Shown in pieces: positions 17,970 through 37,600 of a stretch of 64,000 nucleotides of DNA. Within the stretch, counting starts at the first letter, position 1, and every line of letters begins with the position of its first letter. A model generated the notes under the pieces. It worked only from the letters and a program-made list of their open reading frames with translations. It was not told the DNA's origin and did not search any database. The stretch covers positions 1 to 64,000 of the forward strand of contig NIVC01000242.1 in the NCBI GenBank assembly GCA_002269645.1, written 5' to 3'. This DNA comes from Macrostomum lignano. Its lineage: Eukaryota. The translations under genes and the position numbers were made by a program.

Positions 17970-18964
17970 AGTTTTGCTGGCGATGTGTTCTGGCGTCTTT
18001 TGTATCAAGGAAGCAGCTTGCGTAGCCTGTGCTCCTGTCTGGTATTTATCCTCTTCAGCGCATTCCACGGGAAGGGTGAAGCAGTGGCCAATAAGATTCG
18101 AGCTTTCTGCTCTGGGAAGCTGGCACTACGAGCTACTTTTCTGTTATCTCAAAGCCGTGTTTGAGATCTGCCATCTGGCAGTCGACGAGTCGCGTCAGCT
18201 GCTGCACCTCCTGCCTGACTATCAGGCAGTACGACTCGTGCGCAGAAGAAGTGGCCAGCGATAGGTAGTCTGGACGGCCAAGGCGATGCAGTGTCGCGTT
18301 GGAAACTCGCTCGTCGCCGATCTGGAAGACATGCAGCGAACAGCAGGCCTGCGTCAACTTGCTGTTTGAGCGAGTCCACAATGCACTGCAAGATCCTCGT
18401 GGACATCGGAACCAGAACTGCTGAATAGTTTTACAAAGAAATTGTCTTTCATCAGCGCAATAGGTAACAATTCTCCAAGAGTGCCATCCCAAATCTAGGT
18501 ATTGCTAATCACACGTCACACCTGAATCGAGCCTATATGGGTATTATCCTTACATGTATATCTTAAATTGTAGAACAAGAATTCCTGGATTCCGTGATGC
18601 ACGGGTTGCAGGATTATGGTTTGCTGGAAACAAACAAAAATCTTTTTCGCTGCTATGCAATAACATATTTTTTATTATCCGGGCGTACCGGCCTTTTGTA
18701 AATCGACCTTGCTGATTAATTCAAAATACATCTCCCGCTCCTAATTCCTCAACACTTGACCATCTGAGCACTCCACATGTACCCTTGAGCTGCTGGTCAT
18801 CTGAGAAATTCCGCATAGATTATAACAAATCTGGCAATTAAATTTTGCGATATATTTAGCGCAATATTACATGGATTTCTGATACAATACCGGTATACAC
18901 TCAAGGACTACTTAGGACTTCAGTGGTCCTTGTATACACTATACATGTACAAGCTGTATTTACT

Positions 18965-19547
18965 ACCGAGCTGAGCCTTCCGAGCGGCGAAACGATCTCA
19001 ACCTGCCAAGACTTCCGCTACTTGGGCGCGCTGATCTTGATCCTGAATCCTGAAGATATCATAACGGACCTAAAAGCACAAGCCTGGCGTGCAAAGATCA
19101 AGCTTTTCCGCGCCATAGTCGAACCGATCCTGCTCTACGGACTGGAAACCATACCGGTGACCACCACCCGGGAAAACGCGGGAAAACGCACTAAACGGCA
19201 TCTACCGGGCGCTTCTCCGCTACACACTCGGCATCCGATTCTCCGAGACCATCTCGAACCGCGATCTCGACCGGCGCACCGGCCTTCCGCCTCTCAGCGT
19301 TATCCTGCGGCGGCGGCGACAAACCCTCGCCGGCCACGTTCTGCGACGGCACGGTCGCGGTGAAGCCAACCCCCTCGCGATGGCGCTGCTTCACCCACCG
19401 CGAGAGCGGCTTGACGTGGCCAAGGCCGTGCTGCCTCGCTTATACAGACTCAGCGACCTTGACCTGACCCCGAGTGACACTGCTCTATGCCCCTCTGAGA
19501 ATTCTGTAACCCTATGCGTCTTCTCTATTCTTCTATTCTATTCTATT
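18965..19547 (+). mobile_element. RTE/L2-like LINE 3' fragment, frameshifted
   Basis: Peptides QDFRYLG, KIKLFRAIVEPILLYGLET and LLRYTLGIRFSETISNRDL...LRRRRQTLAGHVLR; (TTCTA)n tail at about 19520-19547. Confidence 0.75.
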
Positions 19548-21256
19548 TACTACCAATGTATATTGATCCATTAAAATAAATATTCGTAAACCTTTTACAG
19601 TAATTAATCATTTAAAGCTCTAGTAGGAATAATTCAAGCAATAGGTGCCTATTATGACTTCTGATTTCGGCCTTTTCTGCTTTTTTGCCGCATGGTTAAT
19701 AACGAGTTTATCTGACCTTGAAAGGCTACTGGCCATAGGTAGTACAGCCAAGACTCCGCTGTTACTTTGTTACTTTCAGCAAATATGTAACACTGTAATC
19801 ATTTGAGCTGACTTGGGTTGAGGCGAACGGTAATCCTGTCCTGCATTTCCTAGAAAGTAGTTCTCACTTGCATCATTGTCTAAGAATAAAAAATTCGGTT
19901 TTAAATGCACCCCTCGTAAAGTTTTCCATAACAGTTGTGCAAGAACAAATAAGGGATTTCTAACCAGTCATTACATTGAGGCAAATTGAAACCGTATTAC
20001 TAAATACCTACACGTCTCGTGTCTTAAATGGAAGTCTAATGAAAGAAGAGGTTTGTAGTCAGGGGCTGTGTCTATACGTGTGTCAATGTTGCGCTTGGTC
20101 TCTTTCGATTGCGGGCAGCTGTCGTTGTCATTTTTTGTTGTTGCTTTTATATTGCTGTTGTTATTGTTATTCACAGCGAATACAGAAGGCCAAATACCGA
20201 GGTACATGTAGTGACTGTTTTTGCTGTTGTTTTTCAACTGTGCATGGATCCATCACGACCCATTCAAGTCAAGAACAGTAACTGAGTCCTAGCGCTCAAT
20301 TCACTGTCTCGCAATACGAGTAGATATAGTCACCCCACAACCCTGCTTGTTTCCGAACGGGGGGGGGTAATGTCTAATTTACAATTCGTGCCGATTTTTG
20401 TTGTTTTGTACCATGCTTGGGCGCAACCTAGGGTTCGATTCAACCGGCCTTCTCTATGTCACTTCATCAAAAGCGTCCTTGAATAGTTTCAATAGCCATC
20501 TCAAGTCAAGTACTTGAAATTCAAACTTATTCTGCATATACATAGCTTTTAATATTGAGTCACTGTGTGTAGTAGAGCGCCTATACTAAAAAAATTCAAC
20601 AAACTTTGCATGCATCGATTTGATATTTTAATTGCTTTCATTTTTTGTTACGAATTTATTCGGCTTAACTGCAAACCGCGAGGTATCGCATGGTACAAAG
20701 CATACATGCGCAACCTAGGGATTCCCCCGGCCGTTTCTATTGGCAACACACATGTAAGTCACGTGACTGCTCCCAGCCAATAGCGACTTACATGTAAATA
20801 TGTGATACGTAAAATGATACGTCCAGGACCACCGTGTTACCCCTACTCTCCTTGCATGGATAAATCATGGATGAAGCATCCATGATGCCATGTATGGATC
20901 ATACCTGAACATGTATGGAGCCATACCTGATCATACATGGTTCCACGTAAACTTCATCCATGGTTACTTTCCATCCATGTACATTGATGTATGATTTTAA
21001 ATATAATTTTCCTTACTACACTACTGTTAGTAGAACGCAATGTTTGCGTAGGTTCATTTTAAAGCTGAAATTTTCTAAACAAATTCGGCAGCATCTTTAG
21101 TGCTGCTGAGAAATATGTTTCCATTCCCTTATAAATCACTTTCAAAACAAAAAAGTATCAGAACAAATACTTATGCAATTAAATGTAGAAGTAATTGAAA
21201 ACTCGTATGATGACCATTTCGAGACTTATATTATTAATGATAATTAGGCATAATTC

Positions 21257-21806
21257 ATTTCAAAGTACTGTAAGAAAAAATAAGACAGCTCAGTCTCAGA
21301 GAGCTTTAAAATACAGAATGGACAGAATTTGACGCATTTCAAGGTACTGTAAGAAAAAATAAGACAGCTCAGAGAGCTTTAAAATACAGAATAGACAGAA
21401 TTTGACGCATTTCAAGGTACTGTAAGAAAAAATAAAACAGCTCAGAGAGCTTTAAAATACAGAATAGACAGAATTTGACGCATTTCAAGGTACTGTAAGA
21501 AAAAATAAAACAGCTCAGAGAGCTTTAAAATACAGAATAGACAGAATTTGACGCATTTCAAGGTACTGTAAGAAAAAATAAAACAGCTCAGAGAGCTTTA
21601 AAATACAGAATAGACAGAATTTGACGCATTTCAAGGTACTGTAAGAAAAATAAAACAGCTCAGAGAGCTTTAAGATACAGAATAGACAGAATTTGACGCA
21701 TTTCAAGGTACTGTAAGAAAAAATAAAACAGCTCAGAGAGCTTTAAGATACAGAATAGACAGAATTTGACGCATTTCAAGGTACTGTAAGAAAAAATAAA
21801 ACAGTA
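21257..21806. repeat. 73-bp tandem array (about 7.5 copies) inside the EnSpm element
   Basis: Unit TTTCAAGGTACTGTAAGAAAAAATAAAACAGCTCAGAGAGCTTTAAAATACAGAATAGACAGAATTTGACGCA; starts at 21337, 21410, 21483, 21556, 21629, 21701 and 21774. Confidence 0.95.
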
Positions 21807-22133
21807 AATTTTACTGAACAGTCAATAAATAGAATTAGCCGAATTCGGTACGCATTAAGGGCAAGGGCCGACTAATCCTTTACGAAACGAAGTTAATGCT
21901 GCATTAGTCAATTATTTGCGCACAGAAACTTGGAGATTTTGAATATGGAGAGATCGGACAAAGAGAGGTAACGGTGGGAGTCTGAGAGGGAGGAAGTTGG
22001 GCATCTGGAAAGTTATTCTGATTCCCTGATGGTTTTATCTTGGTCATGGAGCATAATTTTATTTTCTGCCAGACTTTGCAGCATTAATAATAAAATAATC
22101 GGATCTAAGGTACGGACACATACTCGTACCTTT

Positions 22134-24434
22134 TTAATCATGTTCAAACTCTTTGAACAATGGCACAGCGCAATAACAGTCTTTGCTGAACGATTCTACT
22201 GGAACAGCGATGCAGGGTCGATCGACCTCTGAAAAATTAACTATACGTTCGCGTCTGGCCGATCTGGGCGCATTAGACAGGGATATCAATACAAAATTGA
22301 ATGTCGAAGACTTTTTGAACATGGATTCCAGCAATGCTTTCCAATTAAGTAAATCGATGGGGAAAGTTGCTGCTGGTACTCGTAAAACAAAATCAAACAG
22401 CGAACCAATGGGATCCAAAATTTGCACTCGAATAGTATTAGGCTCGAGGAACTCTGCAATAGTGCAGATTTCGCCGGACTTCAATTGGCAAAGATGGTTA
22501 GAATTTTTCGACGCACAAGCTGAGCTTGTCGAGAAAAAATGTCCATTAAAATAAGCAAGTGAGTTTCGAAGAATACCATGTGGCCTGGATGGCTCTAAAG
22601 ATATAGAGTTAACTGCATCCACTACAATAGAGTCCTTAACACAAGAAAAGTAGTGATGTAGCAACTTTTGAAACAAAAACTTGCGAACAAGCTGTGGGCC
22701 AAATGACACAGTTCCGCATAAGAACTTTTTGAACATGCCAATGGAGCTCTCAAATGCGAACATAGAATAATTAAATACAGGTCCGTACAATTCGTACTGT
22801 TCAGCCATATGCAAAAGCAGGTGGAAATTAAGGCGGAGTACTTTCGGTCCGAATATTTGCTGAGCATTGGAGATAAAAGCTTTGCATAGCTTTTCGATAT
22901 CAGTCTTATTTGATTGGGGGCTATACAACATGTGATAAATAAGAACTAAATTAGTTAACAGCAGTTTCAATGGAAAATGCGAAATTCTCTGCAAAAACGT
23001 AGGAAGAAGAAAGTATAGCGCAAAGTTTTTAAAATGCTTTGCTTTCCAATCTGAAAAGCCTTTAAAATTTGTGTTGATTGTGATGCTAGAAGGAGTTATA
23101 GATTGACGAATACAATTAGATATGAAATCCATGCAATTAGCTGAGCAAAAATACAACTCGCGCCTGTTTGCAGGTAATGACAGCTCTTCTAGTAGATACT
23201 TGGTGTGGCCTTCGAAAAAGCAGTGTAAACTGTCAATAGGATTGCAGCTGGGAAACGGAACATAGTCTAACAAGCAACTGCGCATCTTTACGCCAAAAAC
23301 AGGCCGATTTCGAATTTGTGCGAGCCGACAGTGTTCAAGATGGGAAGATGGGTTTCTCAAAGGAAACAAGTAGCCTTCACCATAGCGGAAGATCCAGTTT
23401 TTACCTTTCTCGGATACTTTAAAGCTCTCACCTGGGTGCAAGCACCTAGGACAGCTAAACGCACCATTGTACTGGTGAATGCAGAAGAGCTTAGCAAGAG
23501 CGGGCAAGTCACAAACAAAGAGTGTGTAATGGACATGAACGGTGTATTCCGAGAATATAAACTGTTTTGGCAAATTGTTCATAATTTCAGACAGAAAAGA
23601 CTGGAAATGCGGGACTGCCTTCGATGAAACAAGAGCAATTAGAATTAAATTTGCAAAGCGTTGACGGATGTAAACAGGAAGGTTTAGAAGTTGAGCCTGA
23701 AATGGCCAAAAGCTACTCTGAACAGATTCAAAAAAATTGGCGCCATCAGCTGAGATTAGAAGATGCAAGTGAAGCGACTTGCCAGAAGATAGGCTTAAGC
23801 CTTGTTCTTTAACTATTTTGGAATTCAAAACGTCTGTGTTTTTATCCTTTTGCAATTCTTGCTCATACTGCAGAATAGTTGAAGTGTGGCTGCTTAAGAT
23901 AGTCCGCAGCTGTGGAACAATATTGAGCTGTGTCACAGCAACCTTTGACTTTGGGGAATGAACCTGACACTGGCTTTTGCATTCTGGGCAAAAGCCAAAT
24001 TCAGACACGTCACTATCATCAAGAGGGCAAGTATCTTGAATCAATGATTTGAGCAACTTGACGCTATTTGGAAGAGCTAGAGAATCTCTACTAAAAATAG
24101 AAAGTAGCTTCAGGAGTCTATCAAGAGCAGCCTCTGAAACTCCGGAAGTAATTGCCCACTGAAAAATCAGAGCCGCCTGCACACTGGGATCTGAGATGGA
24201 AGCCAAATTCGCTAAGCTATCTGAACTCTCCTCAAGCACAGGCACAGCATTGTTTTCACCAATAAAAGTTTCCACAGCGTCAGGACAGCTGTGCGAGTGC
24301 GTTACACCGGCTTCGCTTGAAATTGAACTCCTATTACTTGTAGAAAAACTATTTGAGGGAGAAGAAATCGCCTGACAAGAGTAGGCTGAGTAATTAGTAG
24401 AAAGAGAGTGCTCAGATTCTGATTTACTAGACAT
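22134..24434 (-). CDS. EnSpm/CACTA-type (Tnp2/TnpD-like) DDE transposase, 766 aa, uninterrupted
   Basis: CMC motifs: CPEC..C..H, ISADG...SFWP...LNLP..IR, VCDLPA...HQYNGAFSCPRC, IDSLHCFFEG, FHLLLH....YELYGP....SMFAFESSIG. Confidence 0.9.
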   Translation of the reverse strand: MSSKSESEHSLSTNYSAYSCQAISSPSNSFSTSNRSSISSEAGVTHSHSCPDAVETFIGENNAVPVLEESSDSLANLASISDPSVQAALIFQWAITSGVSEAALDRLLKLLSIFSRDSLALPNSVKLLKSLIQDTCPLDDSDVSEFGFCPECKSQCQVHSPKSKVAVTQLNIVPQLRTILSSHTSTILQYEQELQKDKNTDVLNSKIVKEQGLSLSSGKSLHLHLLISADGANFFESVQSSFWPFQAQLLNLPVYIRQRFANLILIALVSSKAVPHFQSFLSEIMNNLPKQFIFSEYTVHVHYTLFVCDLPALAKLFCIHQYNGAFSCPRCLHPGESFKVSEKGKNWIFRYGEGYLFPLRNPSSHLEHCRLAQIRNRPVFGVKMRSCLLDYVPFPSCNPIDSLHCFFEGHTKYLLEELSLPANRRELYFCSANCMDFISNCIRQSITPSSITINTNFKGFSDWKAKHFKNFALYFLLPTFLQRISHFPLKLLLTNLVLIYHMLYSPQSNKTDIEKLCKAFISNAQQIFGPKVLRLNFHLLLHMAEQYELYGPVFNYSMFAFESSIGMFKKFLCGTVSFGPQLVRKFLFQKLLHHYFSCVKDSIVVDAVNSISLEPSRPHGILRNSLAYFNGHFFSTSSACASKNSNHLCQLKSGEICTIAEFLEPNTIRVQILDPIGSLFDFVLRVPAATFPIDLLNWKALLESMFKKSSTFNFVLISLSNAPRSARRERIVNFSEVDRPCIAVPVESFSKDCYCAVPLFKEFEHD

Positions 24435-24483
24435 AAAAATAGCAATTCAAATATTCAAAAGTTACTAGAATTTTTTCCGCAAT

Positions 24484-26434
24484 TCACGGTCCCATTCGCC
24501 TTGAGCGGGAAATGGAATCCCCTGACTCGGGTCCAGAAGCAGCAGTTGAAGTTCGCTTTCTCGCCCGTGTCTCCTCCCTGGCCAGCTGATTGAGATGGTC
24601 TCGTACAGACTTCCAGATTTCGTGGAAGTCGTAGCCAGATGTTCGATAGCACAATTGAAGCAAACCTGAAAATTCACGAGTATAGTAAAATATTTTTACA
24701 ATAGACATTGTGTACTGTGTTTATAGTAGAAATAGGCTAAATTTAAAAGGAAGTTGATTTATGATGCTAATCATTAAATAGGTCAATGGGATGTATTGAA
24801 CTTTAGAACTATTTTTCCTCAATTTCTTTTATCTCAGACCTAAATGTGTTTTTTTAGAAAATATCCCAAGTATTGGATTCAGATCATTTAGCATTAATTA
24901 GCCTAAATTGCTTTATAATAAAAAAATTGCACAAAACTGTGAAAAAATTATATATATATATTTACGTTGAAACTCTGTCACATGCTCAGATGGAGCAGGC
25001 CTTCGGGAACTGCGAGCACCACAGGATGAATCGATTATATGCTCAAGCAAGTAGCCTTCGCCAAATCGCAGCTTGATATACCTTCGGAGGAACACCTTAG
25101 GATCGTTGCAAAGAATTGAAGACAGCTCAGCTAGGGAACCATCAATGCACCTAAATTCCTAAAAAATGTTATTATATAGTAGAACTTTTATACTACAGAC
25201 GTGATGCTGCTGATGCTAAGAAAAAACTGACATACCTCATTTTGGTATTCTTTAATTGTTAGCATTCCACCAAAGTTGTCATCCTTTTTTAAAAGTCGGC
25301 ATATCCTTGCAGCAAGACGCTTCTCAAGAGAAAGCAACTCGGATTGAATGAACAGTTTTAGATCTAGAGTAAGATATATGCTCATATATAAAAATATGGT
25401 GATTTTGATTTTTAATAATGTGATTGTATCATATTAAAAAAATAAAATTATACCTTTCATTGTTGCATCCGATTCACTGTTTACTATCTGTACCCCTCGG
25501 AGGGGTTGCACTTCTTGAATTGCACCTAGTGATAAAAAAGGCTTATTGCTACAAAAATATTGACTCATTTGGTATTTGGTTTTCAATTAGGTGTAATAGA
25601 ATATACAAACTTGATTCCAAGAGGCCTGTGGCACGAGCTTGCTCATTTTCAACCAAAGATGCCTCTCTCTCAAATGCAGAAATGGCTTTTTCTAAAAAAT
25701 AATAATTAATCAAATAATACAACAAAAAAAACAAATTGCAAACAATTAATAGTTCATATATATTGCAGTTTTACCCATTGATTGAGTAGCTGGTATCGCC
25801 AAATTTGGTTCGCCACTTTCACTATCCACTTCATAAAGCTCGTCAAGTAGTCCATGCTGATGACAACTAGAACTTGAAGCAACCTGCTTTGAACTAGATG
25901 ACCTTATTGTCCTTACATTTGCAATGCCAGCTTGGGGATCTTTCATTGCAAAAAGCTCAATAGCTTGGCTAATCAATGAATCAGTATTTTCAGCCTCACT
26001 AACCAAGTTGGAAAGTTGGTTCATAGTTGAAGCCATTTGCCTTTCACTACCTTTTGCCACAAGTGTAGCAGAAAATAGTTTGCCATACATGCGTAAAAAG
26101 ACTTTAGTCCCCTAAAATATAATTTAATAAAGTAATATTACATTTGTAGTTGGAATAATTTGTTTTAGAAACCATGTACTCAATAACAAAATATTATGCA
26201 TATAAATCCAACTTAAAATCTTACTTGTGCAAGTTCCAACTTTTCATCATTAGTTATTGTACTTGGCCAATAGGGAGACCCAAATGCAATGGTCACATAT
26301 TGCTCATCATGGCCAACATTGTGAAGAATAAAGCAGAAAAACAATGCTGAATTGTCATTTCCAAATTTAGAAGTACTTTTTGTCTGCTTTCGAAGAGGCC
26401 TAGAATTAGATGCACTTAATCCAATATCATCCAT
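24484..26434 (-). CDS. Transposon accessory gene (TnpA-position), 7 exons, 400 aa, coiled-coil plus C-terminal BEN-like domain
   Basis: Phase-consistent GT-AG exons: 26225-26434, 25775-26111, 25611-25691, 25454-25525, 25236-25363, 24966-25158 and 24484-24665 (1203 nt, no internal stop). The C-terminus FLRRYIKLRFGEGYLLEH...LLQLCYRTSGYDFHEIWKSVRDHLNQLARE fits the BEN/DUF4806 pattern by eye. Confidence 0.75.
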
Positions 26435-29369
26435 AACAATTTGTTCTGAAAAAGTTTCACAAGGAGATAAGGTTTGAAGAATCAATCAAGAGGCCAATGA
26501 CAAACCAATTAGAATTGTATATAAAAAAAATTTAATGTAGGGACCCTAGGCCCCTATGATTTTAAATAAAAATTATAATATAAGGCCTAGGCCCTATATA
26601 TAGGCCTATAATTATAAAGTTGTGCCATTGTGGATTTTCTGATACAAAGTAGACAATATTAGGCCTAATTGGGCCTAGTCTAGTCTAGTTTTGATTATAG
26701 ACTGTATATTAGATACAAAGGACATGAAAGGTCTCGAAATTAAGTACCAATTACCATAATATACTATTATTTTTTATTATTTTGAAACTGTCAGCCTACC
26801 ATGTGATTTTTATCATTAGGCTATGGCCTAGGTCTAGGATGCCACTTTAGACTAGGCCTTTGGCTTTGGTTAGGCCAACCTATCATTATAAAAATGCAGC
26901 AAAATATCATTCAAAAATATACATCTAACCCCTATAGGTTATCTTTGCATCCCAAATATAATATATAATAGGGTTTCTATTTTCTAATATATCTACAAAT
27001 ACAATTTTCACTGAAGGAGTGAAGATCAAAATTAGCATGTCAAAAAACCTTACAAGCCACCGAATTTTAAAACTAGCTACCAAAAGTGGAACTGGAAGTA
27101 TATAGCTAAGAAAAAACATAAACATAAACATAGCACATAGTGACACATAATGAAATGATGACAACATGCAAGAGTGACAGAGTCCTCTTAGAAAGGAAAA
27201 ATAGGCCTAGTAATTTATGTTTATGGGAAGTTAAGTCCGTAATTAACTAAACCGAAACAAAATGGCCAACAAAATTGCTGGTAATATATTCAAAGCAATT
27301 TGTAGGTGAAGATTTTAACAAATTTATTAAACTATTTTTTGTATTTACAATTTCGCTTTTATTAAATATATTTAAAACTTTATTAGATATACATAAAATA
27401 GCCTGAAATTTTTTATAAGCTTAGTTATTTATTTTCCCGTATGAACTCCCTGACATGGATGATTTTACCATGGAAAGTTTTAAAAATCCATGCATGAAAA
27501 TACCATGAACATGCATGATTTATCAATGGATCATGGATCATAGATGATTTATCCATGATAAGAGAGTAGGGACGTAAAAAAGCTGCTCGGGACTGTATAA
27601 TTAATTTTCAGCGCCATAGCCCATGTGTTTATACACATGTGTTTTAACGCAGCCCCGTCACAATGTATACACGCGTATTTACGCTTAGGTATCCATGTAA
27701 ATTAATCGTATACATGTAATGTACTGTTCACAATTGTATAATAGTCGACTGATCTGCAGGGCTCTCTTATCGCCTTACCTATACATGTATATGCATTATA
27801 TATTATGAAATGGATGATGAAGTCATAATTCAGGGATCACGTGGTTGGATATAGATAGACAGTCGCGCGTGGTGAACAACGTACATGTACCGCGGTCCCA
27901 TTCGGTCAACAATAGCATAACCCGGATTTTTATCTGAGGGATCACGAGCCAAGATCAGTCATAGCACTCCTCATAGTCAATGTCACTGTGACATAATCAA
28001 GCTCCAGGGTATTTTTCAGTGAGGCAAGAATCACTGAATAAAATGACTTAGCGCCACAGGCTAGGCGAGGGTTTATAGCTTTTAAGTCGTGTGTTCTTCG
28101 TGTATCGATGATCACCTTAATTTAATTTTGCTGACAATTAAAAAAGCAATATTCTAAATTTCAATAGTCGGGTCTCTGTGGGCTATGAACCCCATGACCC
28201 TCTTTGGCTACGCCCAATGGCGGTTCAGGACCACACCACTGAGTATACGTTATCGCCTAAATACATGTAAGTACATGTAGTAGAACTGCACTAGTATAAA
28301 TGTCACTTCAAAATAGCGTCCTTGAATACGAGTAGTTTCAGTAGCCATCTAAAGTCAATTACTTGAAATTCAAACTTTTTTGCATGTGTGTTAATATTAT
28401 GTGCGTAGTAAAGCGCCTACTATAAATTCAACAAATTTTGCATGCATTGATTTGATATTTTGATTTTATTTCTTTTGTTACGAATTTATACGGCTCAACT
28501 GCAAAACTAATTTTGACATAAAATGATAACGAAAAGGCTTAAGCATTCAAGAATTCTTAACTTTAACTAAAAGCTACTATTGTGCTTATCTTTTGTTTTT
28601 TAGTTATTTAAAACTTTTTAAAATACGGTTTTCACAGAAAACATCAACAAAACTATGATCTTCCATATACGACTATGCAAGACATAATCACATAAGTGAA
28701 TCATCTAAGACTCTAAGAGTGAATAAAGAGGCGTAATGTGATACCTTTACCCGATAAAAATCTTTTTTAAGTAAATTTTTCTTCTCCCTATACATACGTA
28801 AGTAATAATCTCCAGCCCACTATCATATCATATAGGCATATGGCCTATAGCCTAGATATAGATAGATACCGTATAGCGGCTTTAAGGAAAAAGACACTGA
28901 TCGTTGATGTATGACTATAAGTGCTGTATATAGCTGGACTGACAGGTAAAGGCCTACAACTGACCCTAAAATATTATTATTTAATTTTTGACTCAAATGT
29001 CACCTGGTCCTGACTCCTGAGCAGACATGTCACTGCATTTCTGGTGCCAAATTTAAACCTAGGTTACACTTCTTAGTTAAATTCAACTGAGAATGAATGT
29101 AAAATCCATAATAGATGCTAAAAAGTGTACTATTCTACTACAATAATGTGCAATAAATGTTAGGCTAGGTCTATTTTCTCCATATAATGTACATTTAAAT
29201 TCTAAGTTAAGTTTAAATATTTTGATTTTGGAGCTAGTAAAATGGTATATAATAATAGTATAGACAAGATATAGTAGTTAGAGATATATTTACTATGAAT
29301 ATAAATAACTATTTTATGACTTATATTTGTAATTATATAATTTAACTATGCCCTAGTAGCCCGGCCCCT

Positions 29370-30015
29370 AGATTATAGTCATTTTGGTGACATTTTGGTG
29401 ATAGTCTTTTTGGTGACAAGCAATTGTCATTTTGGTGACAAGAAAAATACCCTTTTAGTGATAGCCATTCTGTTTTTAAATAGAAAATAACCTTGCAAAT
29501 CTTAAGGGATATTAAACCTAAAAATGTAAAAATTTTTTGAAATGGTTAAATATTGCTTTATTTAATTTTGTTTATTTACAATTACAGGGTTGCAATCTTT
29601 TGAATTTATGTTTTCCAATCCAAATAATACAGTGTCCAGTGAATATCTCTGCTTTTCTTGTGGTTGACATTTCATAAGGATTTATAGGTTTATAGTTTAT
29701 GTCTAAATATTCTAAGACAATTTAAAACAATCTGCTCAAAAATAAAACAATCTAATTGGTTTGATTTCTTTTCTTAAAATATTAATCTTTTGGCAAAAAA
29801 TTTAAATATATATACAAAGCATAAATCTTAACAATATAACTTCAAGCTAATATTATAAAGCACCTGTTATCACTAAAATAAATATACTCTTAAAATCTTT
29901 ATTTTTTCATCAAAAATGAAGTGGTCTATTACAAAAGCAACTTGTCACCAAAACGACTATTTGTCACCAAAATGTCTGTCACCAAAATGACTTGTCACCA
30001 AAACAACTAGTATCC
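29370..30015. mobile_element. Non-autonomous MULE/foldback-like element with subterminal repeats
   Basis: Termini AGATTATAGTCATTTTGGTGACA and the reverse complement GGATACTAGTTGTTTTGGTGACA. TTTTGGTGAC occurs about 4 times at the left end and GTCACCAAAA about 4 times at the right end; the interior is AT-rich and non-coding. Confidence 0.7.
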
Positions 30016-31641: not shown

Positions 31642-34600
31642 ATGAAAGTGACGGTGAGCTTCGGTTCCACAAAGCTGGTGGTGCCATGCGGCGCCGGCGA
31701 GATCACCATACGCGATCTGGTTGCCAAGGCAACCAGTCGATTCAGATCAGCTGCCGCGGCGGCGGCGTCTTCATCATCAAACTCGACCTCTTCTCCAGCT
31801 GCCGGGGTAGCCACCGCACCACCGACTGATGCTGGCGATGGCACCGCCGCCACCTTGGCTGAGCCGCCGTTTACCGTCACCTGCGTGACTCTGGCCAGGG
31901 ATGGCGGAATTCTTGACTGGGACGACCGGGTTGCCGATGTTCTGGACGATCGAGAAATGGTGAGTTGGGTCAACAGCGTAGTGCAATCTCTCATAGAGAA
32001 AGTGAAATCTCCCATAGAGAAAGTGCAATCTCCCATAGAGAAAGTGCAATCTCCCATAGAGAAAGTGCAATCTCCCATAGAGAAAGTGCAATCTCTCATA
32101 GAGAAAGTGCAATCTCTCATAGAGAAAGTGCAATCTCCCATAGAGAAATTGCAATCTCTCATAGAGAAAGTGCAATCTCCCATAGAGAAATTGCAATCTC
32201 CCATTGATAAAGTGCAGTCTCCCTGAATGACTTAAATCAATATTTCCTGTGCAGCTCATCGCCCAGACGCGGCCAGCATCGTCCGAGGCGTCTACAGCTG
32301 ATGGCACAGACGATCTGCTTCTGACGGAGTTTCAGCAGCAGCATCAGCTGCATCATCCGTCTCTTCTGCCGCCTCCGCCTGCGGATTTTCTGCCTACACT
32401 GCCCGAGTCGGACGGCGAGGCTGAGCGATACGATTCTCCCCCTGGCGAGGCTGAACTCGAATCGGACGATGCTCAAGAGTTTGAGTCGGCCAGTTATCTG
32501 ATTCGCATCTCTATTGACCGGGCATCGGCCGGCGCTGCTAGGAATGCGGTCGGCATGACAACAAAACCGTTTTTAGATCGCAGTCAACGAACTGCAGGCC
32601 TAGAAATTCAGGCCCTGGGTGCCGGCGGTTCGGCTGCCAAGGACGGCCGATTGAGACCGGGCGATCGAATTGTGGAAATCAATGGCAACTCTTTGTTGGG
32701 CGTGTCATTCCAACAGTGAGTCTGCTGGCTGGGTTGGGTTGGGCTAGTTAGAATAGTACTTAACTGTACCTAGGCCTGTGACCGCGAGTCTAGGGTCTAG
32801 GGTCACCGGTGTGACCTTGCATTGTGACCGTATTGTCTAGGGTCATCGGTGTGACCTTGCATTGTGACCGTATTGTCTAGGGTCATCGGTGTGACCTTGC
32901 ATTGTGACCGTATTGTCTATGGTCACCGGTGTGACCTTGCATTGTGACCGTATTGTCTATGGTCACCGGGGTGACCTTGCATTGTGACCGTATTGTCTAG
33001 GGTCACCGGTGTGACCTTGCATTGTGACCGTATTGTCTATGGTCACCGGGGTGACCTTGCATTGTGACCGTATTGTCTATGGTCACCGGTGTGACCTTGC
33101 ATTGTGACCGTATTGTCTAGGGTCATCGGTGTGACCTTGCATTGTGACCGTATTGTCTATGGTCACCGGGGTGACCTTGCATTGTGACCGTATTGTCTAT
33201 GGTCACCGGTGTGACCTTGCATTGTGACCGTATTGTCTATGGTCACCGGTGTGACCTTGCATTGTGACCGTATTGTCTAGGGTCATCGGTGTGACCTTGC
33301 ATTGTGACCGTATTGTCTAGGGTCATCGGTGTGACCTTGCATTGTGACCGTATTGTCTAGGGTCACCGGTGTGACCTTGCATTGTGACCGTATTGTCTAT
33401 GGTCACCGGGGTGACCTTGCATTGTGACCGTATTGTCTAGGGTCACCGGTGTGACCTTGCATTGTGACCGTATTGTCTATGGTCACCGGGGTGACCTTGC
33501 ATTGTGACCGTATTGTCTATGGTCACCGGTGTGACCTTGCATTGTGACCGTATTGTCTATGGTCACCGGTGTGACCTTGCATTGTGACCGTATTGTCTAT
33601 GGTCATCGGTGTGACCTTGCATTGTGACCGTATTGTCTAGGGTCATCGGTGTGACCTTGCATTGTGACCGTATTGTCTAGGGTCATCGGTGTGACCTTGC
33701 ATTGTGACCGTATTGTCTAGGGTCACCGGTGTGACCTTGCATTGTGACCGTATTGTCTATGGTCACCGGGGTGACCTTGCATTGTGACCGTATTGTCTAG
33801 GGTCACCGGTGTGACCTTGCATTGTGACCGTATTGTCTATGGTCACCGGGGTGACCTTGCATTGTGACCGTATTGTCTATGGTCACCGGTGTGACCTTGC
33901 ATTGTGACCGTATTGTCTATGGTCACCGGTGTGACCTTGCATTGTGACCGTATTGTCTAGGGTCATCGGTGTGACCTTGCATTGTGACCGTATTGTCTAG
34001 GGTCATCGGTGTGACCTTGCATTGTGACCGTATTGTCTATGGTCACTGGTGTGACTGTAAATTGTGGCCGTTTTTTTTTATTTATATAGGTAAAATTTAA
34101 AGAAAAAACTAGGCAGGTACATGCGTGAAACTCAAACCGCCCCAACAGAGCTCAGGAATTGTTGCGCGAAGCGGTGCAAGAGTTGCGCTTAGATCTGCGC
34201 ATTCTCAAACAGCAGCAGCAACCGCAGGAGCAACTATGCCGCAATCTAGACGAAATTGCTCGAGCTCACACTCAGTCGATTATGATGCAGCAGCCAGAAA
34301 ACTCTGAAAGATCCGACTCACCTGTGCTAGTTGCACCGCCACCGCCGCCCCCGCCGCCGCCTCCGCCTCCACCGTATGTGCCTATTAGTAATACTAAAAC
34401 TGTCGTTAAGGCTGCTGCCACCGCTGCGGCACCTCCGTCTTCTTCGTCCCCGCCGCCGCCGCCGCCGCCTCCGGCAGTGCAGTTGAAGCCATCGACTCCG
34501 CCTCGATCGCCATCGCCGCCTCCAGTTATGCCTAGACTGCGGAAACCGTTGTTAAATAATAATCGGCGCCCTGCTGTCGATCCCGCCCCCGCATCCGCCC

Positions 34601-37600
34601 CGCATCCGGCCCGACCGACGGCACTGCGGATGCTGGCTCTATTGTGCACACTTTCACTATCGATATACGCAAATCAGCCGACGGATTGGGCTTCTCTGTT
34701 ACAGCTAAAGAGTCGCAGGATAATAGCAATGGGATCTATGTGAAGAATGTTCTAGGCAAAGGTTCGGCTGTTAAGGACGGCAGGCTGAAGGCTGGCGATC
34801 AGCTGCTAGAGGTGGACGGATTTAAACTGACTGGCCAGACTCAAGCGGACGCTGTTAGTCTGTTGCGCGCTATACCTGTTGGCGCCACCGTCAAGATGCT
34901 GGTGTCTCGGGTGGGCGGCCAGCCGCCGCCGCCGCCACCGCAGCCGCCGCCTGCACCAGTCATTAACCATCTTGGTCAGGGCGGCGTTGAGGTTAGTTGT
35001 TAATTCATTTATTAAATATGTTCTGCATATATTTGCTCGGGGAGCGGCTCTCGCTCATGAGGGCCAAGCCCGAAGGCTTGGGGTGCAGCTCTTTTACACG
35101 TACTATTTCTATTGTAACTCTATCATTACAAATGCTGAATATTCTGTGCTAGTCAACAGTATTTGAACTGACCATACAAAATGAATGACGGCATTTTAAA
35201 AAGAATGCAGACGCTGACAGAAAAAAAAATAGATGTCAATCAGGTGAGCTTTGCAGCAAGCTAGCCAGAAGAAAAGTATGTTAATATATAGTTGTCGAAT
35301 CCAGTCAATAGAAATCATGCTCAACCATGCTCAACGGTTAGATTTTTTTGTGTGCGCACGCAAAAAAATCAGTCAAAATTTTTTTGTAACCATGATGAAA
35401 AGAATGAGGAGGCAGACATATAGTACAGTAAATGGGCTCAATTGTCAGACACTTGGCATTGTCCTGTACTGGCCACTGCCGGGCTGCTTGCTTGTACTCT
35501 TATTACACTGACTTGACCGCCGGAAGATGGCGGGACAGGGGCTGCTGAATCTAAGGAGGCCTTAAACCAGATTCTGGGAGTGCGAAAGTCTTCCCATATA
35601 AAGCCTTGATTTCTCAGACAGTTACCCGGTAGACTTCAGGTTTTACTGTTTGCACGCAATGGTAGAAGGCCGAATCTTAGTCTCATTCTAAAGCTAAATA
35701 GATTCTCACTGTCTCGGTAAATATAATCAGATTTCGAATCATAATAGAACTTTGATAAATGCTTGTTTTACGCAAGGACTACTCAAGTACTCGTAGGACG
35801 GATGATACGTGTTTTACACAAGGACTACTCAAGTACTCGGACGGATGCTGCGTGTTTTACGCAAGGACTACTCAAGTACTCGGACGGATGCTGCGTGTTT
35901 TACGCAAGGACTACTCAAGTACTCGTAGGACGGATGATGCGTGTTTTACGCAAGGACTACTCAAGTACTCGTAGGACGGATGATGCGTGTTTTACACAAG
36001 GACTACTCAAGTACTCGTAGGACGGATGATGCGTGTTTTACACAAGGACTACTCAAGTACTCGTAGGACGGATGATGATGTTTTACACAAGGACTACTCA
36101 AGTACTCGTAGGACGGATGATGCGTGTTTTACACAAGGACTACTCAAGTACTCGTAGGACGGATGATGCGTGTTTTACACAAGGACTACTCAAGTACTCG
36201 TAGGACGGATGATGATGTTTTACACAAGGACTACTCAAGTACTCGTAGGACGGATGATGCGTGTTTTACACAAGGACTACTCAAGTACTCGTAGGACGGA
36301 TGATGCGTGTTTTACACAAGGACTACTCAAGTACTCGTAGGACGGATGATGCGTGTTTTACACAAGGACTACTCAAGTACTCGTAGGACGGATGATGCGT
36401 GTTTTACACAAGGACTACTCAAGTACTCGTAGGACGGATGATGCGTGTTTTACACAAGGACTACTCAAGTACTCGTAGGACGGATGATGCGTGTTTTACA
36501 CAAGGACTACTCAAGTACTCGTAGGACGGATGATGCGTGTTTTACACAAGGACTACTCAAGTACTCGTAGGACGGATGATGCGTGTTTTACACAAGGACT
36601 ACTCAAGTACTCGTAGGACGGATGATGCGTGTTTTACACAATGACTACTCAAGTACTCGTAGGACGGGGGAACCGACGTTTCTTGGAAAACTTTAGAGGA
36701 GTCAAAAATCAAAGAAAATCTTTCTGTTACACATTTTTGGTACAGTAATAAAGCTAAGAATAAAGCTGGTTTCCCGTCCCACTTCAGTAGTCCTTGATTT
36801 CCTATATTTTCTCACATCCATTGAGGGCCAACCTACAAGGCACAGAAAGCCAGGGCCGATGTACACCCTGTGTGAGCGCGTGTGTAAGAGTGCGCGCTTG
36901 CATGTGCTCAGGGGTCAGCGGAATGGGCAGAATTTGCCTCGCGGGTTGTGTGACAATGTCGCTTATTTGCATGTGTGCTTGCAAACTGGAAACTTGCTGT
37001 CCGCCTAATCGTGTCTGTCTTAAGGTTTTAATAAAGCTTTTTTTTTAAATCCAGCTTCTCGTTCAAGATTTTCTTGGGCCAAGTTGCTCATAGCAACCCA
37101 TCGGTTCCTTGTGCGAAATTCCCCACAGGCTTGACAAAAGTACCAGTGGGAGATTCTTTTTGGCGACAATAAAAGAGCAATATTTAATTGTGCCGTCCGT
37201 CTCTGCGCTGGAAACAACATTATTGCGTATATTGTTTTATATTCATAGACGGTATCTACGAGTAAAACTGGTTCATATAAAAAGCTCGTAAACTTGATAA
37301 TGTCTGCAGCCTTATTGCATTTGGCTGGAAATCTGGGCTGCACTCTTGAGTACCGCTGCGTGCTCTGTAGCCAGTTCTGTATGTGTGTTGCAGCGCAGTG
37401 TGAGTAGATAAGGATGCTGCAGTTGTAGGCACAATTTAATATTGCATGTATTTCTTGAGTTCATAATTCATGCTCATCAATTTTTTTATTGGCAGCGTAC
37501 AGAAATCTATTTTGATGATCTAAAAGTATCTCAGGATAATCTTACGGTGTCTACAAATAATGTAAGGGTCTACGGATCTACGGATGGTCTAAGGTTATCT

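What the first reader, a model, noticed from the sequence alone, without database searches (positions are those of the whole stretch)
24484..26434. Hidden 7-exon transposon gene encoding a coiled-coil plus BEN-like protein
The gene is invisible as a single ORF. Seven small exons join with perfect phase consistency into 400 aa: an N-terminal small beta-type domain (YVTIAFGSPYWP...GTKVFLRMYGKLFSATLVAKG), a disordered linker, an amphipathic helix (MKDLKLFIQSELLSLEKRLAARICRLL) and a BEN-like C-terminus. Known: BEN domains are DNA-binding chromatin regulators and occur in some transposons. Inference: this is an animal functional analogue of plant TnpA that binds subterminal repeats or counters silencing. 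It is the best candidate for an undescribed system in this window.
Basis: partly seen in the sequence, partly recalled or inferred. Interest (0 to 1): 0.72.

Follow-up and report, generated by a model that had tools for sequence, protein, structure and literature searches.

The report
Hidden BEN-fold gene in flatworm transposon
A recently active DNA transposon of the flatworm Macrostomum lignano carries, just upstream of its transposase, an unannotated seven-exon gene for a protein whose tail has the fold of a BEN DNA-binding domain. This protein is probably the element's own DNA-binding helper, comparable to TnpA of maize En/Spm.

Summary
On the minus strand, 26434..24484, seven exons join through six GT..AG introns into a 400-aa ORF. 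RNA could not be checked, but comparison supports the gene. Two sister transposon families in the same genome (transposases 62-63% identical) carry the same gene with the same phases. Exons 3, 5 and 6 have identical lengths, dN/dS is 0.12-0.18, and the introns do not align.

The gene lies in a 6,731-bp CMC-superfamily element (20841-27571). The element has CCCTA... terminal inverted repeats, 2-bp target duplications (7 of 7 copies) and CATGGA subterminal repeats. Copies are 99.7-100% identical, so it moved recently.

No Pfam BEN or DUF4806 match exists. However, AlphaFold models hit only BEN domains in the PDB (top 18 hits, probability up to 0.99, TM 0.55-0.68). The best sequence-profile hit in the PDB is also a BEN domain, BEND6 (E 0.039). 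The N-terminal domain is a tentative Tudor-like barrel.

Relatives 20-25% identical sit beside related transposases in two other, unidentified lineages. They are absent next to more distant CMC transposases.

The TnpA-like role (binding the subterminal repeats) is plausible but untested. I rate this a new variant of a known kind, of moderate interest.

The parts
20841..27571 (-). Complete autonomous CMC-superfamily (Mirage/TRC-like) DNA transposon, 6,731 bp. Gene order on the minus strand: 5' TIR, 7-exon accessory gene, transposase, 73-bp repeat array, 3' TIR.
   Evidence: Inverted repeat I1. The element is 100% identical over 6,731 bp to L003, which has different flanks, and 99.7-99.9% identical to six other copies.
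27533..27571 (-). 5' terminal inverted repeat (CCCTACTCTCTTATCATGGAT... in gene orientation)
   Evidence: 39-nt arms, 82% complementary. The same terminus is found in 5 other copies.
20841..20879 (+). 3' terminal inverted repeat (CCCTACTCTCCTTGCATGGAT... read inward on the + strand)
20839..20840 (.). Target-site duplication AC (left copy)
   Evidence: AC on both sides. 2-bp TSDs in 6 of 6 near-identical copies with both ends, and in L009.
27572..27573 (.). Target-site duplication AC (right copy)
27454..27557 (.). 5' subterminal cluster of CATGGA / ATCCATG repeats (5 copies, both orientations)
   Evidence: Of 14 CATGGA sites in the element, 10 lie in the terminal ~140 bp of the two ends.
20855..20979 (.). 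3' subterminal cluster of CATGGA / ATCCATG repeats (5 copies, both orientations)
   Evidence: The same motif clusters at both ends of the sister element L009.
26225..26434 (-). Exon 1 (aa 1-70): variable N-terminus and first strands of the beta-rich N-terminal domain
25775..26111 (-). Exon 2 (aa 71-183): rest of the N-terminal domain plus two helices (to about aa 125), then the disordered Ser-rich linker
25611..25691 (-). Exon 3 (81 nt; same length in all three families): helical linker
25454..25525 (-). Exon 4 (72 nt, phase 1 in and out). Poorly conserved linker exon, 54 nt in L009 and 57 nt in L010.
25236..25363 (-). Exon 5 (128 nt): conserved amphipathic helix directly before the BEN-fold domain
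24966..25158 (-). Exon 6 (193 nt): first part of the BEN-fold domain. It covers two beta-strands, alpha helices and the basic alpha3-alpha4 loop (G.RS.RRPAP).
24484..24665 (-). Exon 7 (to the TGA stop): alpha4, the long C-terminal helix (LNQLAREETR...) and a basic tail
24435..24483 (-). 49-nt spacer between the accessory gene's stop and the transposase ATG. It has no AATAAA or ATTAAA.
22134..24434 (-). Single-exon transposase, 766 aa, CMC superfamily
   Evidence: DUF1258 1.2e-14; DUF4218 and Transposase_21 below their cut-offs. Invariant D230, D309, C328-x2-C331, H538-x3-H542 and E562. The identical protein is found on 8 contigs.
21256..21804 (.). 73-bp tandem repeat array (7.5 copies) in the element's 3' non-coding region. 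Copy number varies between insertions.

Best explanation
The seven exons form a genuine second gene of an autonomous Mirage/TRC-like (CMC superfamily) cut-and-paste transposon of Macrostomum lignano, and the gene is under purifying selection. Its 400-aa product has four parts. The first is a beta-rich, possibly Tudor-like N-terminal domain. The second is a disordered acidic/Ser-rich linker. The third is a conserved amphipathic helix that probably mediates self-association. The fourth is a highly divergent BEN-fold DNA-binding domain.

The most likely mechanism is that the BEN domain reads the short CATGGA/ATCCATG repeats clustered in both orientations within about 140 bp of each end. Oligomerisation through the helix would then bring the two ends together, or mark them for the transposase. 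This is the role TnpA plays for maize En/Spm.

Shown: the gene, its selection, its linkage to one transposase clade, the BEN fold (predicted) and the subterminal repeats. Inferred: DNA binding, the identity of the binding site, oligomerisation and any role in transposition. The gene and the transposase are probably expressed from one transcription unit, because the spacer is only 49 nt and has no poly(A) signal. M. lignano uses SL trans-splicing and operons. This last step is also inferred.
For: Gene model and selection.

It belongs to the element: it lies inside the TIRs. It is identical in 5 of 8 near-identical copies, with one amino-acid difference in a sixth. It is kept in the sister families L009 and L010 and has diverged about as much as the transposase, 60-61% against 63-64% aa identity.

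Deep linkage: relatives 20-25% identical lie on the same strand near related transposases in two other lineages. In L011/L012 the transposase is 29% identical (E 3e-55). In L014-16 the transposase is 32% identical and the BEN part matches at E 3e-12.

BEN fold: the domain-only model of relative P0010 has pLDDT 85.7. Its top 18 PDB hits are all BEN domains, with probability up to 0.99 and TM 0.55-0.68 over about 110 columns, and everything below is noise. The window protein's own model hits Bsg25A, BANP, NACC1 and BEND6 BEN domains. The family profile's best PDB sequence hit is BEND6 BEN (E 0.039, 17.4 bits, nearly full domain). Two accepted BEN domains score only 19.6 bits against each other. 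hhalign gives E 2e-4.

Topology: the model has two N-terminal strands, helices, a long alpha3-alpha4 loop and a long C-terminal helix. This matches the NACC1 BEN description in PMC11472053. The family's conserved residues (G..RS.R; W..V...LNQ..R) lie in the two elements that contact DNA in solved BEN complexes.

Candidate sites: CATGGA clusters at both ends, also present in L009. There is precedent for a BEN domain reading CATG (NACC1).

Expression: no poly(A) signal in the spacer. Operons in M. lignano have a modal spacing of about 100 bp (PMC8629364).
Against: No Pfam BEN or DUF4806 hit for any member. The sequence-level evidence is marginal. The structures are predictions from a shallow alignment of 7-8 sequences.

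Nothing shows that this protein, rather than the transposase, binds the CATGGA repeats. The repeats and the protein are both conserved between W and L009, so no co-variation test was possible.

The distant element L011 has a different repeat (CCCATTAGATCGAAA). That neither supports nor contradicts the idea.

Gene order differs between lineages: upstream of the transposase in M. lignano, downstream in L011 and L014. Co-transcription therefore cannot be a conserved requirement.

Eleven more distant CMC transposase loci lack the gene, so it is not essential to the superfamily. No transcript evidence was available.
Confidence: 0.5

Rival explanations
1. The protein is a transposon-encoded chromatin or regulatory factor, not a transposition cofactor. 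It could be a BEN-type repressor or insulator-like protein that controls the element's own promoter. It could shield the element from host silencing. It could also tether the element to particular chromatin through the Tudor-like domain, which would bias target choice.
For: Known BEN proteins are mainly transcriptional repressors, insulator factors or chromatin factors. The N-terminal domain gives weak hits to KDM4A/JMJD2A hybrid Tudor histone-mark readers (probability 0.44-0.80, TM 0.30-0.40 to target, 63-67 columns). Maize TnpA itself also regulates the element's promoter and its methylation (PMC1636069 background). Fungal CMC-related elements carry epigenetic accessory genes such as TET/JBP (PMC12730594).
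Against: The Tudor assignment is weak. No sequence-level support was found in Pfam or the PDB, and no aromatic cage was examined. Clustering of the repeats at both termini fits end recognition better than promoter control alone. This rival overlaps the best explanation, because TnpA does both.
Confidence: 0.25
2. The seven exons are not an independent gene. They are upstream exons of the transposase transcription unit. Alternative splicing or recoding would fuse some of them to the transposase and give it a BEN DNA-binding module, much as one En/Spm transcription unit yields both TnpA and TnpD.
For: The spacer is only 49 nt and has no poly(A) signal. The first poly(A)-like signals lie after the transposase stop. 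Spacers are also short in the sister families, at 176 and 194 nt. The transposase N-terminus is low-complexity Ser-rich sequence.
Against: A conserved in-frame stop ends the ORF in all three families. The stop-to-ATG distance is not a multiple of three, and its remainder is not the same in the three families (1, 2 and 2; my arithmetic from the coordinates). Simple readthrough therefore cannot fuse them. In L011 the two genes are 2 kb apart, in the opposite order, and both lack introns. Relatives P0007, P0008 and P0010 are free-standing ORFs.
Confidence: 0.1
3. The gene is a captured host gene, a passenger with no role for the element.
For: DNA transposons do capture host fragments. No function has been demonstrated.
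Against: It is intact and under purifying selection in three element families whose synonymous sites are saturated (dN/dS 0.12-0.18). It is linked to the same transposase clade in two further lineages at 20-25% identity. No free-standing host homologue was found among 1.84 billion representative proteins; that search gave only 7 hits, all short fragments or proteins from small environmental contigs.
Confidence: 0.05
4. It is a chance concatenation of short ORFs and not a real gene.
For: No RNA evidence was available. The assembly's annotation does not call it.
Against: Junctions, phases and exon lengths are conserved across families, with a codon-position signature. Full-length intronless homologues exist. 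Two domains are modelled with confidence.
Confidence: 0.01

Closest known systems
TnpA of maize En/Spm (CACTA) elements
   Same: It is a second, non-transposase protein of a CMC-superfamily transposon. The element carries short repeats clustered in both orientations in the subterminal regions, which in En/Spm are the TnpA binding sites. The accessory gene and the transposase lie on the same strand and are close enough to share a transcription unit.
   Different: There is no sequence similarity to plant TnpA or to any Pfam family. The DNA-binding module here has a BEN fold. The termini are CCCTA... rather than CACTA, and the TSD is 2 bp rather than 3 bp. Here the accessory ORF is upstream and separate from the transposase ORF. 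Binding and function are untested.
SmTRC1 / 'TRC' animal CACTA-superfamily elements of Schistosoma mansoni (PMC1636069)
   Same: The host is also a flatworm. The transposase is Transposase_21-type, TSDs are 2 bp, and TIRs in this animal group start with CCC (shown in the paper for an Aedes aegypti element). Shorter spliced products without the transposase domain (SmTRC-PrA) were proposed there as TnpA analogues.
   Different: The authors found no fold, no domain and no homologues for SmTRC-PrA. I could not compare sequences because none are held. Here the accessory protein forms a family with a recognisable fold, and it is conserved across element families and lineages.
BEN-domain DNA-binding proteins (Insensitive, Elba/Bsg25A, BANP, BEND3/6, NACC1; cryptic BENs such as LIN-14)
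   Same: The predicted fold and topology match: two beta-strands plus five helices, a long alpha3-alpha4 loop and a C-terminal recognition helix. A coiled-coil or helix precedes the BEN domain, as in BANP. Like LIN-14, it is detectable by structure but not by the Pfam HMM.
   Different: Those are host chromatin and transcription factors. This one is encoded by an active transposon next to its transposase. It falls below Pfam's BEN threshold, and its N-terminal domain has no counterpart in known BEN proteins.
Mirage / DUF1258 transposases of Caenorhabditis (CMC superfamily)
   Same: The best Pfam match of the transposase is DUF1258. The TSD is 2 bp.
   Different: No phylogeny was made, so assignment to Mirage rather than another CMC lineage is provisional. 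I found no record of a BEN-fold accessory gene in Mirage elements, but Repbase could not be consulted.

Membership tests
BEN domain (Pfam PF10523) | Match to the Pfam BEN HMM at or above the gathering score | tested here: not met
   No BEN hit at E<=10 for the window protein or any of 9 family members
BEN domain (structural definition) | Globular fold of five alpha-helices with a middle (alpha3-alpha4) loop and a long C-terminal helix alpha5. NACC1 also has two N-terminal beta-strands (PMC10789644, PMC11472053). | tested here: met
   This rests on predicted structures only. The P0010 domain model (pLDDT 85.7) has all top 18 PDB hits as BEN domains, TM 0.55-0.68 over 105-114 columns. The window protein model also hits BEN domains (TMt 0.46-0.60). 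The secondary-structure order matches.
BEN domain | Detectable sequence homology to a solved BEN domain | tested here: inconclusive
   The best PDB hit of the family profile is BEND6 BEN, E 0.039 and 17.4 bits, spanning the domain. hhalign against a 2-sequence BEN alignment gives probability 46% and E 2e-4. Yardstick: BEND6 against Insv scores 19.6 bits.
BEN domain | Sequence-specific DNA binding through alpha5 in the major groove | not testable with these tools
   The only indication is that conserved residues fall in the alpha3-alpha4 loop and the C-terminal helix
DUF4806 (Pfam PF16064) | Match to the Pfam HMM | tested here: not met
   No hit at E<=10 in any member
CMC (CACTA/EnSpm-Mirage-Chapaev) transposon superfamily | [quoted passage not shown] | tested here: met
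   DUF1258 scores 54.9 bits, above its 33.1 cut-off. DUF4218 and Transposase_21 are below their cut-offs. D230, D309, C328-x2-C331, H538-x3-H542 and E562 are invariant in a 6-sequence alignment. Motif definition from PMC12730594. The catalytic assignment is inferred.
CMC superfamily | Terminal inverted repeats with short (2-5 bp) target-site duplications | tested here: met
   39-nt TIRs. Perfect 2-bp TSDs in 7 of 7 insertions with both ends.
CACTA/EnSpm sensu stricto | CACTA termini and 3-bp TSD | tested here: not met
   The termini are CCCTAC... and the TSD is 2 bp. This fits the Mirage/TRC-like group better.
En/Spm TnpA-type accessory protein | Sequence homology to plant TnpA | tested here: not met
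   No Pfam family of any kind was hit
En/Spm TnpA-type accessory protein | Binds subterminal repeats and is needed for transposition | not testable with these tools
   The repeats exist. Binding is unknown.
Tudor / hybrid-Tudor readers | Five-stranded barrel with an aromatic cage | tested here: inconclusive
   Foldseek hits to the KDM4A/JMJD2A tandem Tudor have probability 0.44-0.80, TMt 0.30-0.40 and 63-67 columns. There is no sequence support, and the cage was not examined.

The most novel reading that the evidence does not exclude
This is the first recognised family of transposon-encoded BEN-fold proteins that act as the end-binding or regulatory partner of a eukaryotic DDE transposase. If so, mobile elements of this kind may be a reservoir from which animal BEN-domain transcription factors and insulator proteins were repeatedly domesticated. 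In M. lignano the element would also exploit the host's operon and SL trans-splicing machinery to express two genes from one promoter.
Probability: 0.15. Interest if true: 0.75.

Novelty: new variant of a known kind. Interest (0 to 1): 0.55.

Why it matters
Two-gene CMC/CACTA transposons are well understood only in plants. For animal members the accessory protein has remained an unidentifiable, fast-evolving ORF.

This finding gives that protein a conserved family, a domain architecture and a testable DNA-binding module with an obvious candidate site. It comes from an element that still looks active, with copies 99.7-100% identical, in a flatworm that can be made transgenic. It therefore offers a tractable system for asking how animal CMC transposases recognise their ends.

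It also adds a transposon-borne member to the growing set of BEN domains that only structure comparison can detect, which bears on where host BEN factors came from. Practically, it shows that M. lignano annotation misses multi-exon transposon genes.

Tried and rejected
- **Word-indexed homologue searches.** The spliced protein gave nothing. The family alignment returned only P0010.
- **Pfam scans.** Scans of all members showed only sub-threshold noise. Peptidase_C7 scored 19.6 bits against a cut-off of 27, and only in the three closely related M. lignano proteins, over the BEN region. I reject it as chance.
- **PDB sequence searches.** The full-length protein and the full-length profile gave nothing useful. 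The N-terminal-domain profile gave nothing.
- **Viral structure library.** No meaningful hit.
- **Structure prediction of the window's own C-terminal domain.** I used the relative P0010 instead.
- **Metagenome scans.** Alignments A2 and A3 were too diverse to scan with. The P0010+P0008 scan found no relatives. The transposase-side scan found 11 distant loci without the accessory gene.
- **Stop-codon readthrough fusion to the transposase.** Rejected because the frames differ and are not conserved (from the coordinates).
- **Bacterial-type promoter/terminator scan of the spacer.** Irrelevant for a eukaryote and uninformative.
- **Literature.** Pan et al. 2023 (Curr Biol), on structure-based BEN discovery, is not held. 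Searches for BEN accessory genes in DNA transposons found nothing relevant.
Full report
**1. The observation**

The finding lies on the minus strand. Reading 26434 down to 24484, I spliced seven exons: 26434-26225, 26111-25775, 25691-25611, 25525-25454, 25363-25236, 25158-24966 and 24665-24484. They form a 1203-nt ORF of 400 aa that ends in TGA. All six introns begin with GT and end with AG after a pyrimidine-rich tract. Five are 77-113 nt long and one is 300 nt. Each carries stops in all three frames. Intron GC is 17-30%, against 36-53% in the exons. The coordinates and the '400 aa' are exact.

**2. Organism and element**

The 766-aa ORF immediately downstream on the same strand (24434-22134) is a CMC-superfamily transposase. 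It matches DUF1258 at 1.2e-14, above that family's cut-off, and matches DUF4218 and Transposase_21 below theirs. The identical protein occurs on 8 contigs of Macrostomum lignano assembly GCA_002269645.1.

A 39-nt inverted repeat (20841-20879 and 27533-27571) delimits a 6,731-bp element with CCCTACTCTC... termini. Copy L003 is 100% identical over the full length but has different flanks. The other copies are 99.7-99.9% identical. All six near-identical copies with both ends in hand have perfect 2-bp target duplications (GT, TG, TA, TA, TA, TC), and the sister element L009 has CA.

In an alignment of six transposases, D230, D309, C328-x2-C331, H538-x3-H542 and E562 are invariant. That is the C(2)C / H(3-4)H arrangement described for the CMC clade (PMC12730594). 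The combination of 2-bp TSDs and CCC-starting termini matches the animal 'TRC' group first described from Schistosoma (PMC1636069) and Mirage-like elements. It does not match CACTA in the strict sense.

CATGGA (extended form ATCCATG) is not enriched in the window as a whole. Inside the element, however, 10 of its 14 copies lie within about 140 bp of the two ends, in both orientations. Element L009 shows the same pattern. A 73-bp tandem array in the 3' non-coding part varies in copy number between insertions.

**3. Is the seven-exon gene real?**

The gene calls held for this assembly list nothing upstream of the transposase in any of the ten loci. One UniProt entry (A0A1I8G9A9, 78 aa, named 'Transposase') is a mis-spliced fragment of the L009 version. 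I had no RNA data, so I tested the model by comparison.

Two sister families in the same genome, L009 and L010, have transposases 63% and 62% identical to the window's. Both carry the gene in the same place. Explicit models there give intact ORFs of 364 and 382 aa. All introns are GT..AG and the phases are identical (0,1,1,1,0,1). Exons 3, 5 and 6 have identical lengths of 81, 128 and 193 nt.

Protein identity is 60-61%, close to the 63-64% of the transposases, so the two genes have diverged together. dN/dS is 0.12-0.18 with synonymous sites near saturation. Identity by codon position is about 0.70/0.77/0.46. Exons are 61-64% identical in nucleotides, while introns sit at the 48-50% background.

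Among the near-identical copies the ORF is intact in six of eight. L004 is truncated at the 5' end and L007 has an indel near exon 3. Chance concatenation is excluded.

**4. Relatives elsewhere**

An exhaustive HMMER search of 1.84 billion representative proteins found only seven hits. Three are full-length and intronless: P0007, P0008 and P0010, at 20-23% identity over full-length alignments. They come from environmental assemblies and share the same architecture. None matches any Pfam family.

P0010 lies 2 kb downstream, on the same strand, of an 855-aa transposase. That transposase is 29% identical to the window's (E 3e-55).

A third lineage is L014-L016, whose transposase P0004 is 32% identical. 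It has pieces of the gene on the same strand downstream of its transposase, including the C-terminal domain at E 3e-12.

Eleven more distant CMC transposase loci (23-29% identity) show no trace of the family in the flanks available. The gene is therefore a conserved partner of one transposase clade and not of the whole superfamily. Its position relative to the transposase is not fixed.

**5. Structure and the BEN question**

AlphaFold2 on the window protein, with a shallow alignment, gives mean pLDDT 64.9. Two domains are confident:
- Residues ~30-125 (pLDDT about 88-92): four modelled strand segments followed by two helices.
- Residues ~275-385 (pLDDT about 75-89): two short strands, helices, a long loop and a long C-terminal helix.
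- Residues 130-227 and 256-272 are modelled as disordered or as isolated helices. The conserved helix 229-259 directly precedes the C-terminal domain.

Pfam does not recognise BEN or DUF4806 in any member at E<=10. Three other results converge on BEN:
- **Foldseek, whole model.** The specific hits for the C-terminus are BEN-DNA complexes (Bsg25A, BANP, NACC1, BEND6), with TM 0.46-0.60 normalised to the target. The E-values are weak because the query is a mostly disordered 400-mer.
- **Foldseek, independent domain-only model.** The model of distant relative P0010 has pLDDT 85.7 and pTM 0.76. Its top 18 PDB matches are exclusively BEN domains (Bsg25A, BANP, BEND6, NACC1, Insensitive, BEND3). Probability is up to 0.99 and TM is 0.55-0.68 over about 105-114 of 114 columns. 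Below them the list drops to noise at TM<0.25.
- **Sequence alone.** The family's C-terminal profile has the BEND6 BEN domain as its best hit among 177,635 PDB sequences (E 0.039, 17.4 bits, profile 18-98 against chain 13-97). For calibration, BEND6 and Insensitive, two accepted BEN domains, score only 19.6 bits against each other. hhalign against that pair gives E 2e-4 with probability 46%.

The modelled topology matches the published description of NACC1 BEN. That description has two N-terminal beta-strands and five helices. The alpha3-alpha4 loop contacts the backbone and minor groove, and the C-terminal helix alpha5 reads the bases (PMC11472053). The family's most conserved residues (G..RS.R.PAP, and W..V...LNQ..R[DE]) fall in exactly those two elements.

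I conclude that this is a highly divergent BEN-fold domain. It belongs to the class that only structure comparison reveals, as happened for LIN-14 (PMC10789644).

The N-terminal domain gives only weak matches to the KDM4A/JMJD2A hybrid Tudor domains and has no sequence support. 'Tudor-like' is a lead and not a finding.

**6. How it most likely works**

[quoted passage not shown] The gene is encoded inside an element whose two ends carry clusters of one short motif in both orientations, and it is inherited together with the transposase. This is the anatomy of the En/Spm TnpA system.

I therefore rank first a TnpA-like role: binding the subterminal CATGGA repeats and helping to pair or mark the ends. 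One BEN protein, NACC1, is known to read CATG, so the candidate site is chemically reasonable. That is precedent and not evidence.

I put the probability that this is a real, selected, transposon-encoded BEN-fold protein at about 0.9. I put the specific end-binding cofactor mechanism at about 0.5.

The main rival (0.25) is a regulatory or chromatin role: repression, anti-silencing or tethering. This overlaps with what TnpA also does. A fusion or alternative-splicing relationship with the transposase (0.1) is suggested by the 49-nt spacer without a poly(A) signal. It is weakened by the conserved stop, the non-conserved frame offset, and the separate intronless genes in L011.

M. lignano trans-splices about 30% of its genes and has operons with a modal spacing of about 100 bp (PMC8629364). 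A two-gene operon resolved by SL trans-splicing is therefore a reasonable, untested way to express the pair.

**7. Comparison with what is known, and novelty**

Accessory proteins in CACTA-superfamily elements are known from plants (TnpA), and one was proposed for Schistosoma SmTRC1. BEN is a known DNA-binding fold.

What I could not find described is the combination. The accessory-protein family is conserved across element families and lineages. It has a cryptic BEN fold and an unassigned N-terminal barrel, and it sits in an apparently active animal CMC element. Repbase and Pan et al. 2023 could not be consulted, so prior description there cannot be excluded.

I class it as a new variant of a known kind, with interest 0.55.

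Noticed in passing
window 24435-24483: Only 49 nt separate the accessory gene's stop from the transposase ATG, and there is no AATAAA or ATTAAA. The first poly(A)-like signals are after the transposase stop (22138, 22063). The sister families have spacers of 176 and 194 nt. This suggests a bicistronic or operon-like unit, possibly resolved by SL trans-splicing; a TTCTAG lies 31 nt before the ATG.
   Followed up: partly
window 21256-21804: A 73-bp tandem repeat array (7.5 copies, 97% matches) lies inside the transposon's 3' non-coding region. Its copy number differs between insertions, giving element lengths of 6658-6877 bp.
   Followed up: partly
window 31642-32719 (+): This is the start of a Par-3 homologue: Par3_HAL_N_term at 3.5e-20, then a PDZ domain. 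The transposon lies about 4 kb upstream of its start codon. A 21-bp tandem repeat (11.6 copies, 31980-32223) follows the N-terminal domain and is open in several frames.
   Followed up: partly
window 32795-47992: A striking series of long minisatellite arrays, presumably in Par-3 introns: 40 bp x31.5, 46 bp x19.9, 20 bp x22, 25 bp x20.8, 16-20 bp x49, 24 bp x14.5, GTCA x61 and 44 bp x20. The 44-bp array accounts for the CATGGA hits at 47130-47981.
   Followed up: no
window 29371-30014: A MITE-like structure. Multiple copies of a TTGTCACCAAAA(T/C)G motif lie in inverted orientation about 500-600 bp apart (inverted repeats I3, I6-I10, I16). It sits inside the same AT-rich block (about 20-32 kb, GC 0.31-0.40) that holds the transposon.
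   Followed up: no
window 20786-20807 and 28251-28272: A 22-nt inverted repeat (ACTTACATGTAAATATGTGATA) brackets the transposon at about 50 bp and about 700 bp from its ends. The element may have inserted into another repeat.
   Followed up: no
P0006 = UniProt A0A1I8G9A9 (78 aa, 'Transposase', M. lignano): This database entry is a mis-modelled fragment of the L009-type accessory gene. It contains exon 5, part of exon 6, and read-through into intron 6 (…EFQR|NVICTMLV). The public name is therefore misleading.
   Followed up: yes
P0003 (L010 transposase): Its UniRef label reads 'DUF4806 domain-containing protein', but the precomputed Pfam list shows only DUF1258. I found no DUF4806 match in the window's transposase or in the accessory protein. 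The label probably comes from another cluster member.
   Followed up: partly
L011 46-652: The distant element carrying P0010 has a different subterminal motif. CCCATTAGATCGAAA occurs 5 times forward and 3 times reverse near one end. A comparison of motif against BEN recognition helix across families would be informative.
   Followed up: partly
window 18923-19363 (+): A 146-aa ORF just outside the AT-rich block has a segment (…IVEPILLYGLETIPVTT…) that, from memory, resembles the C-terminal part of non-LTR retrotransposon reverse transcriptases. Pfam gave no hit at E<=0.01.
   Followed up: partly
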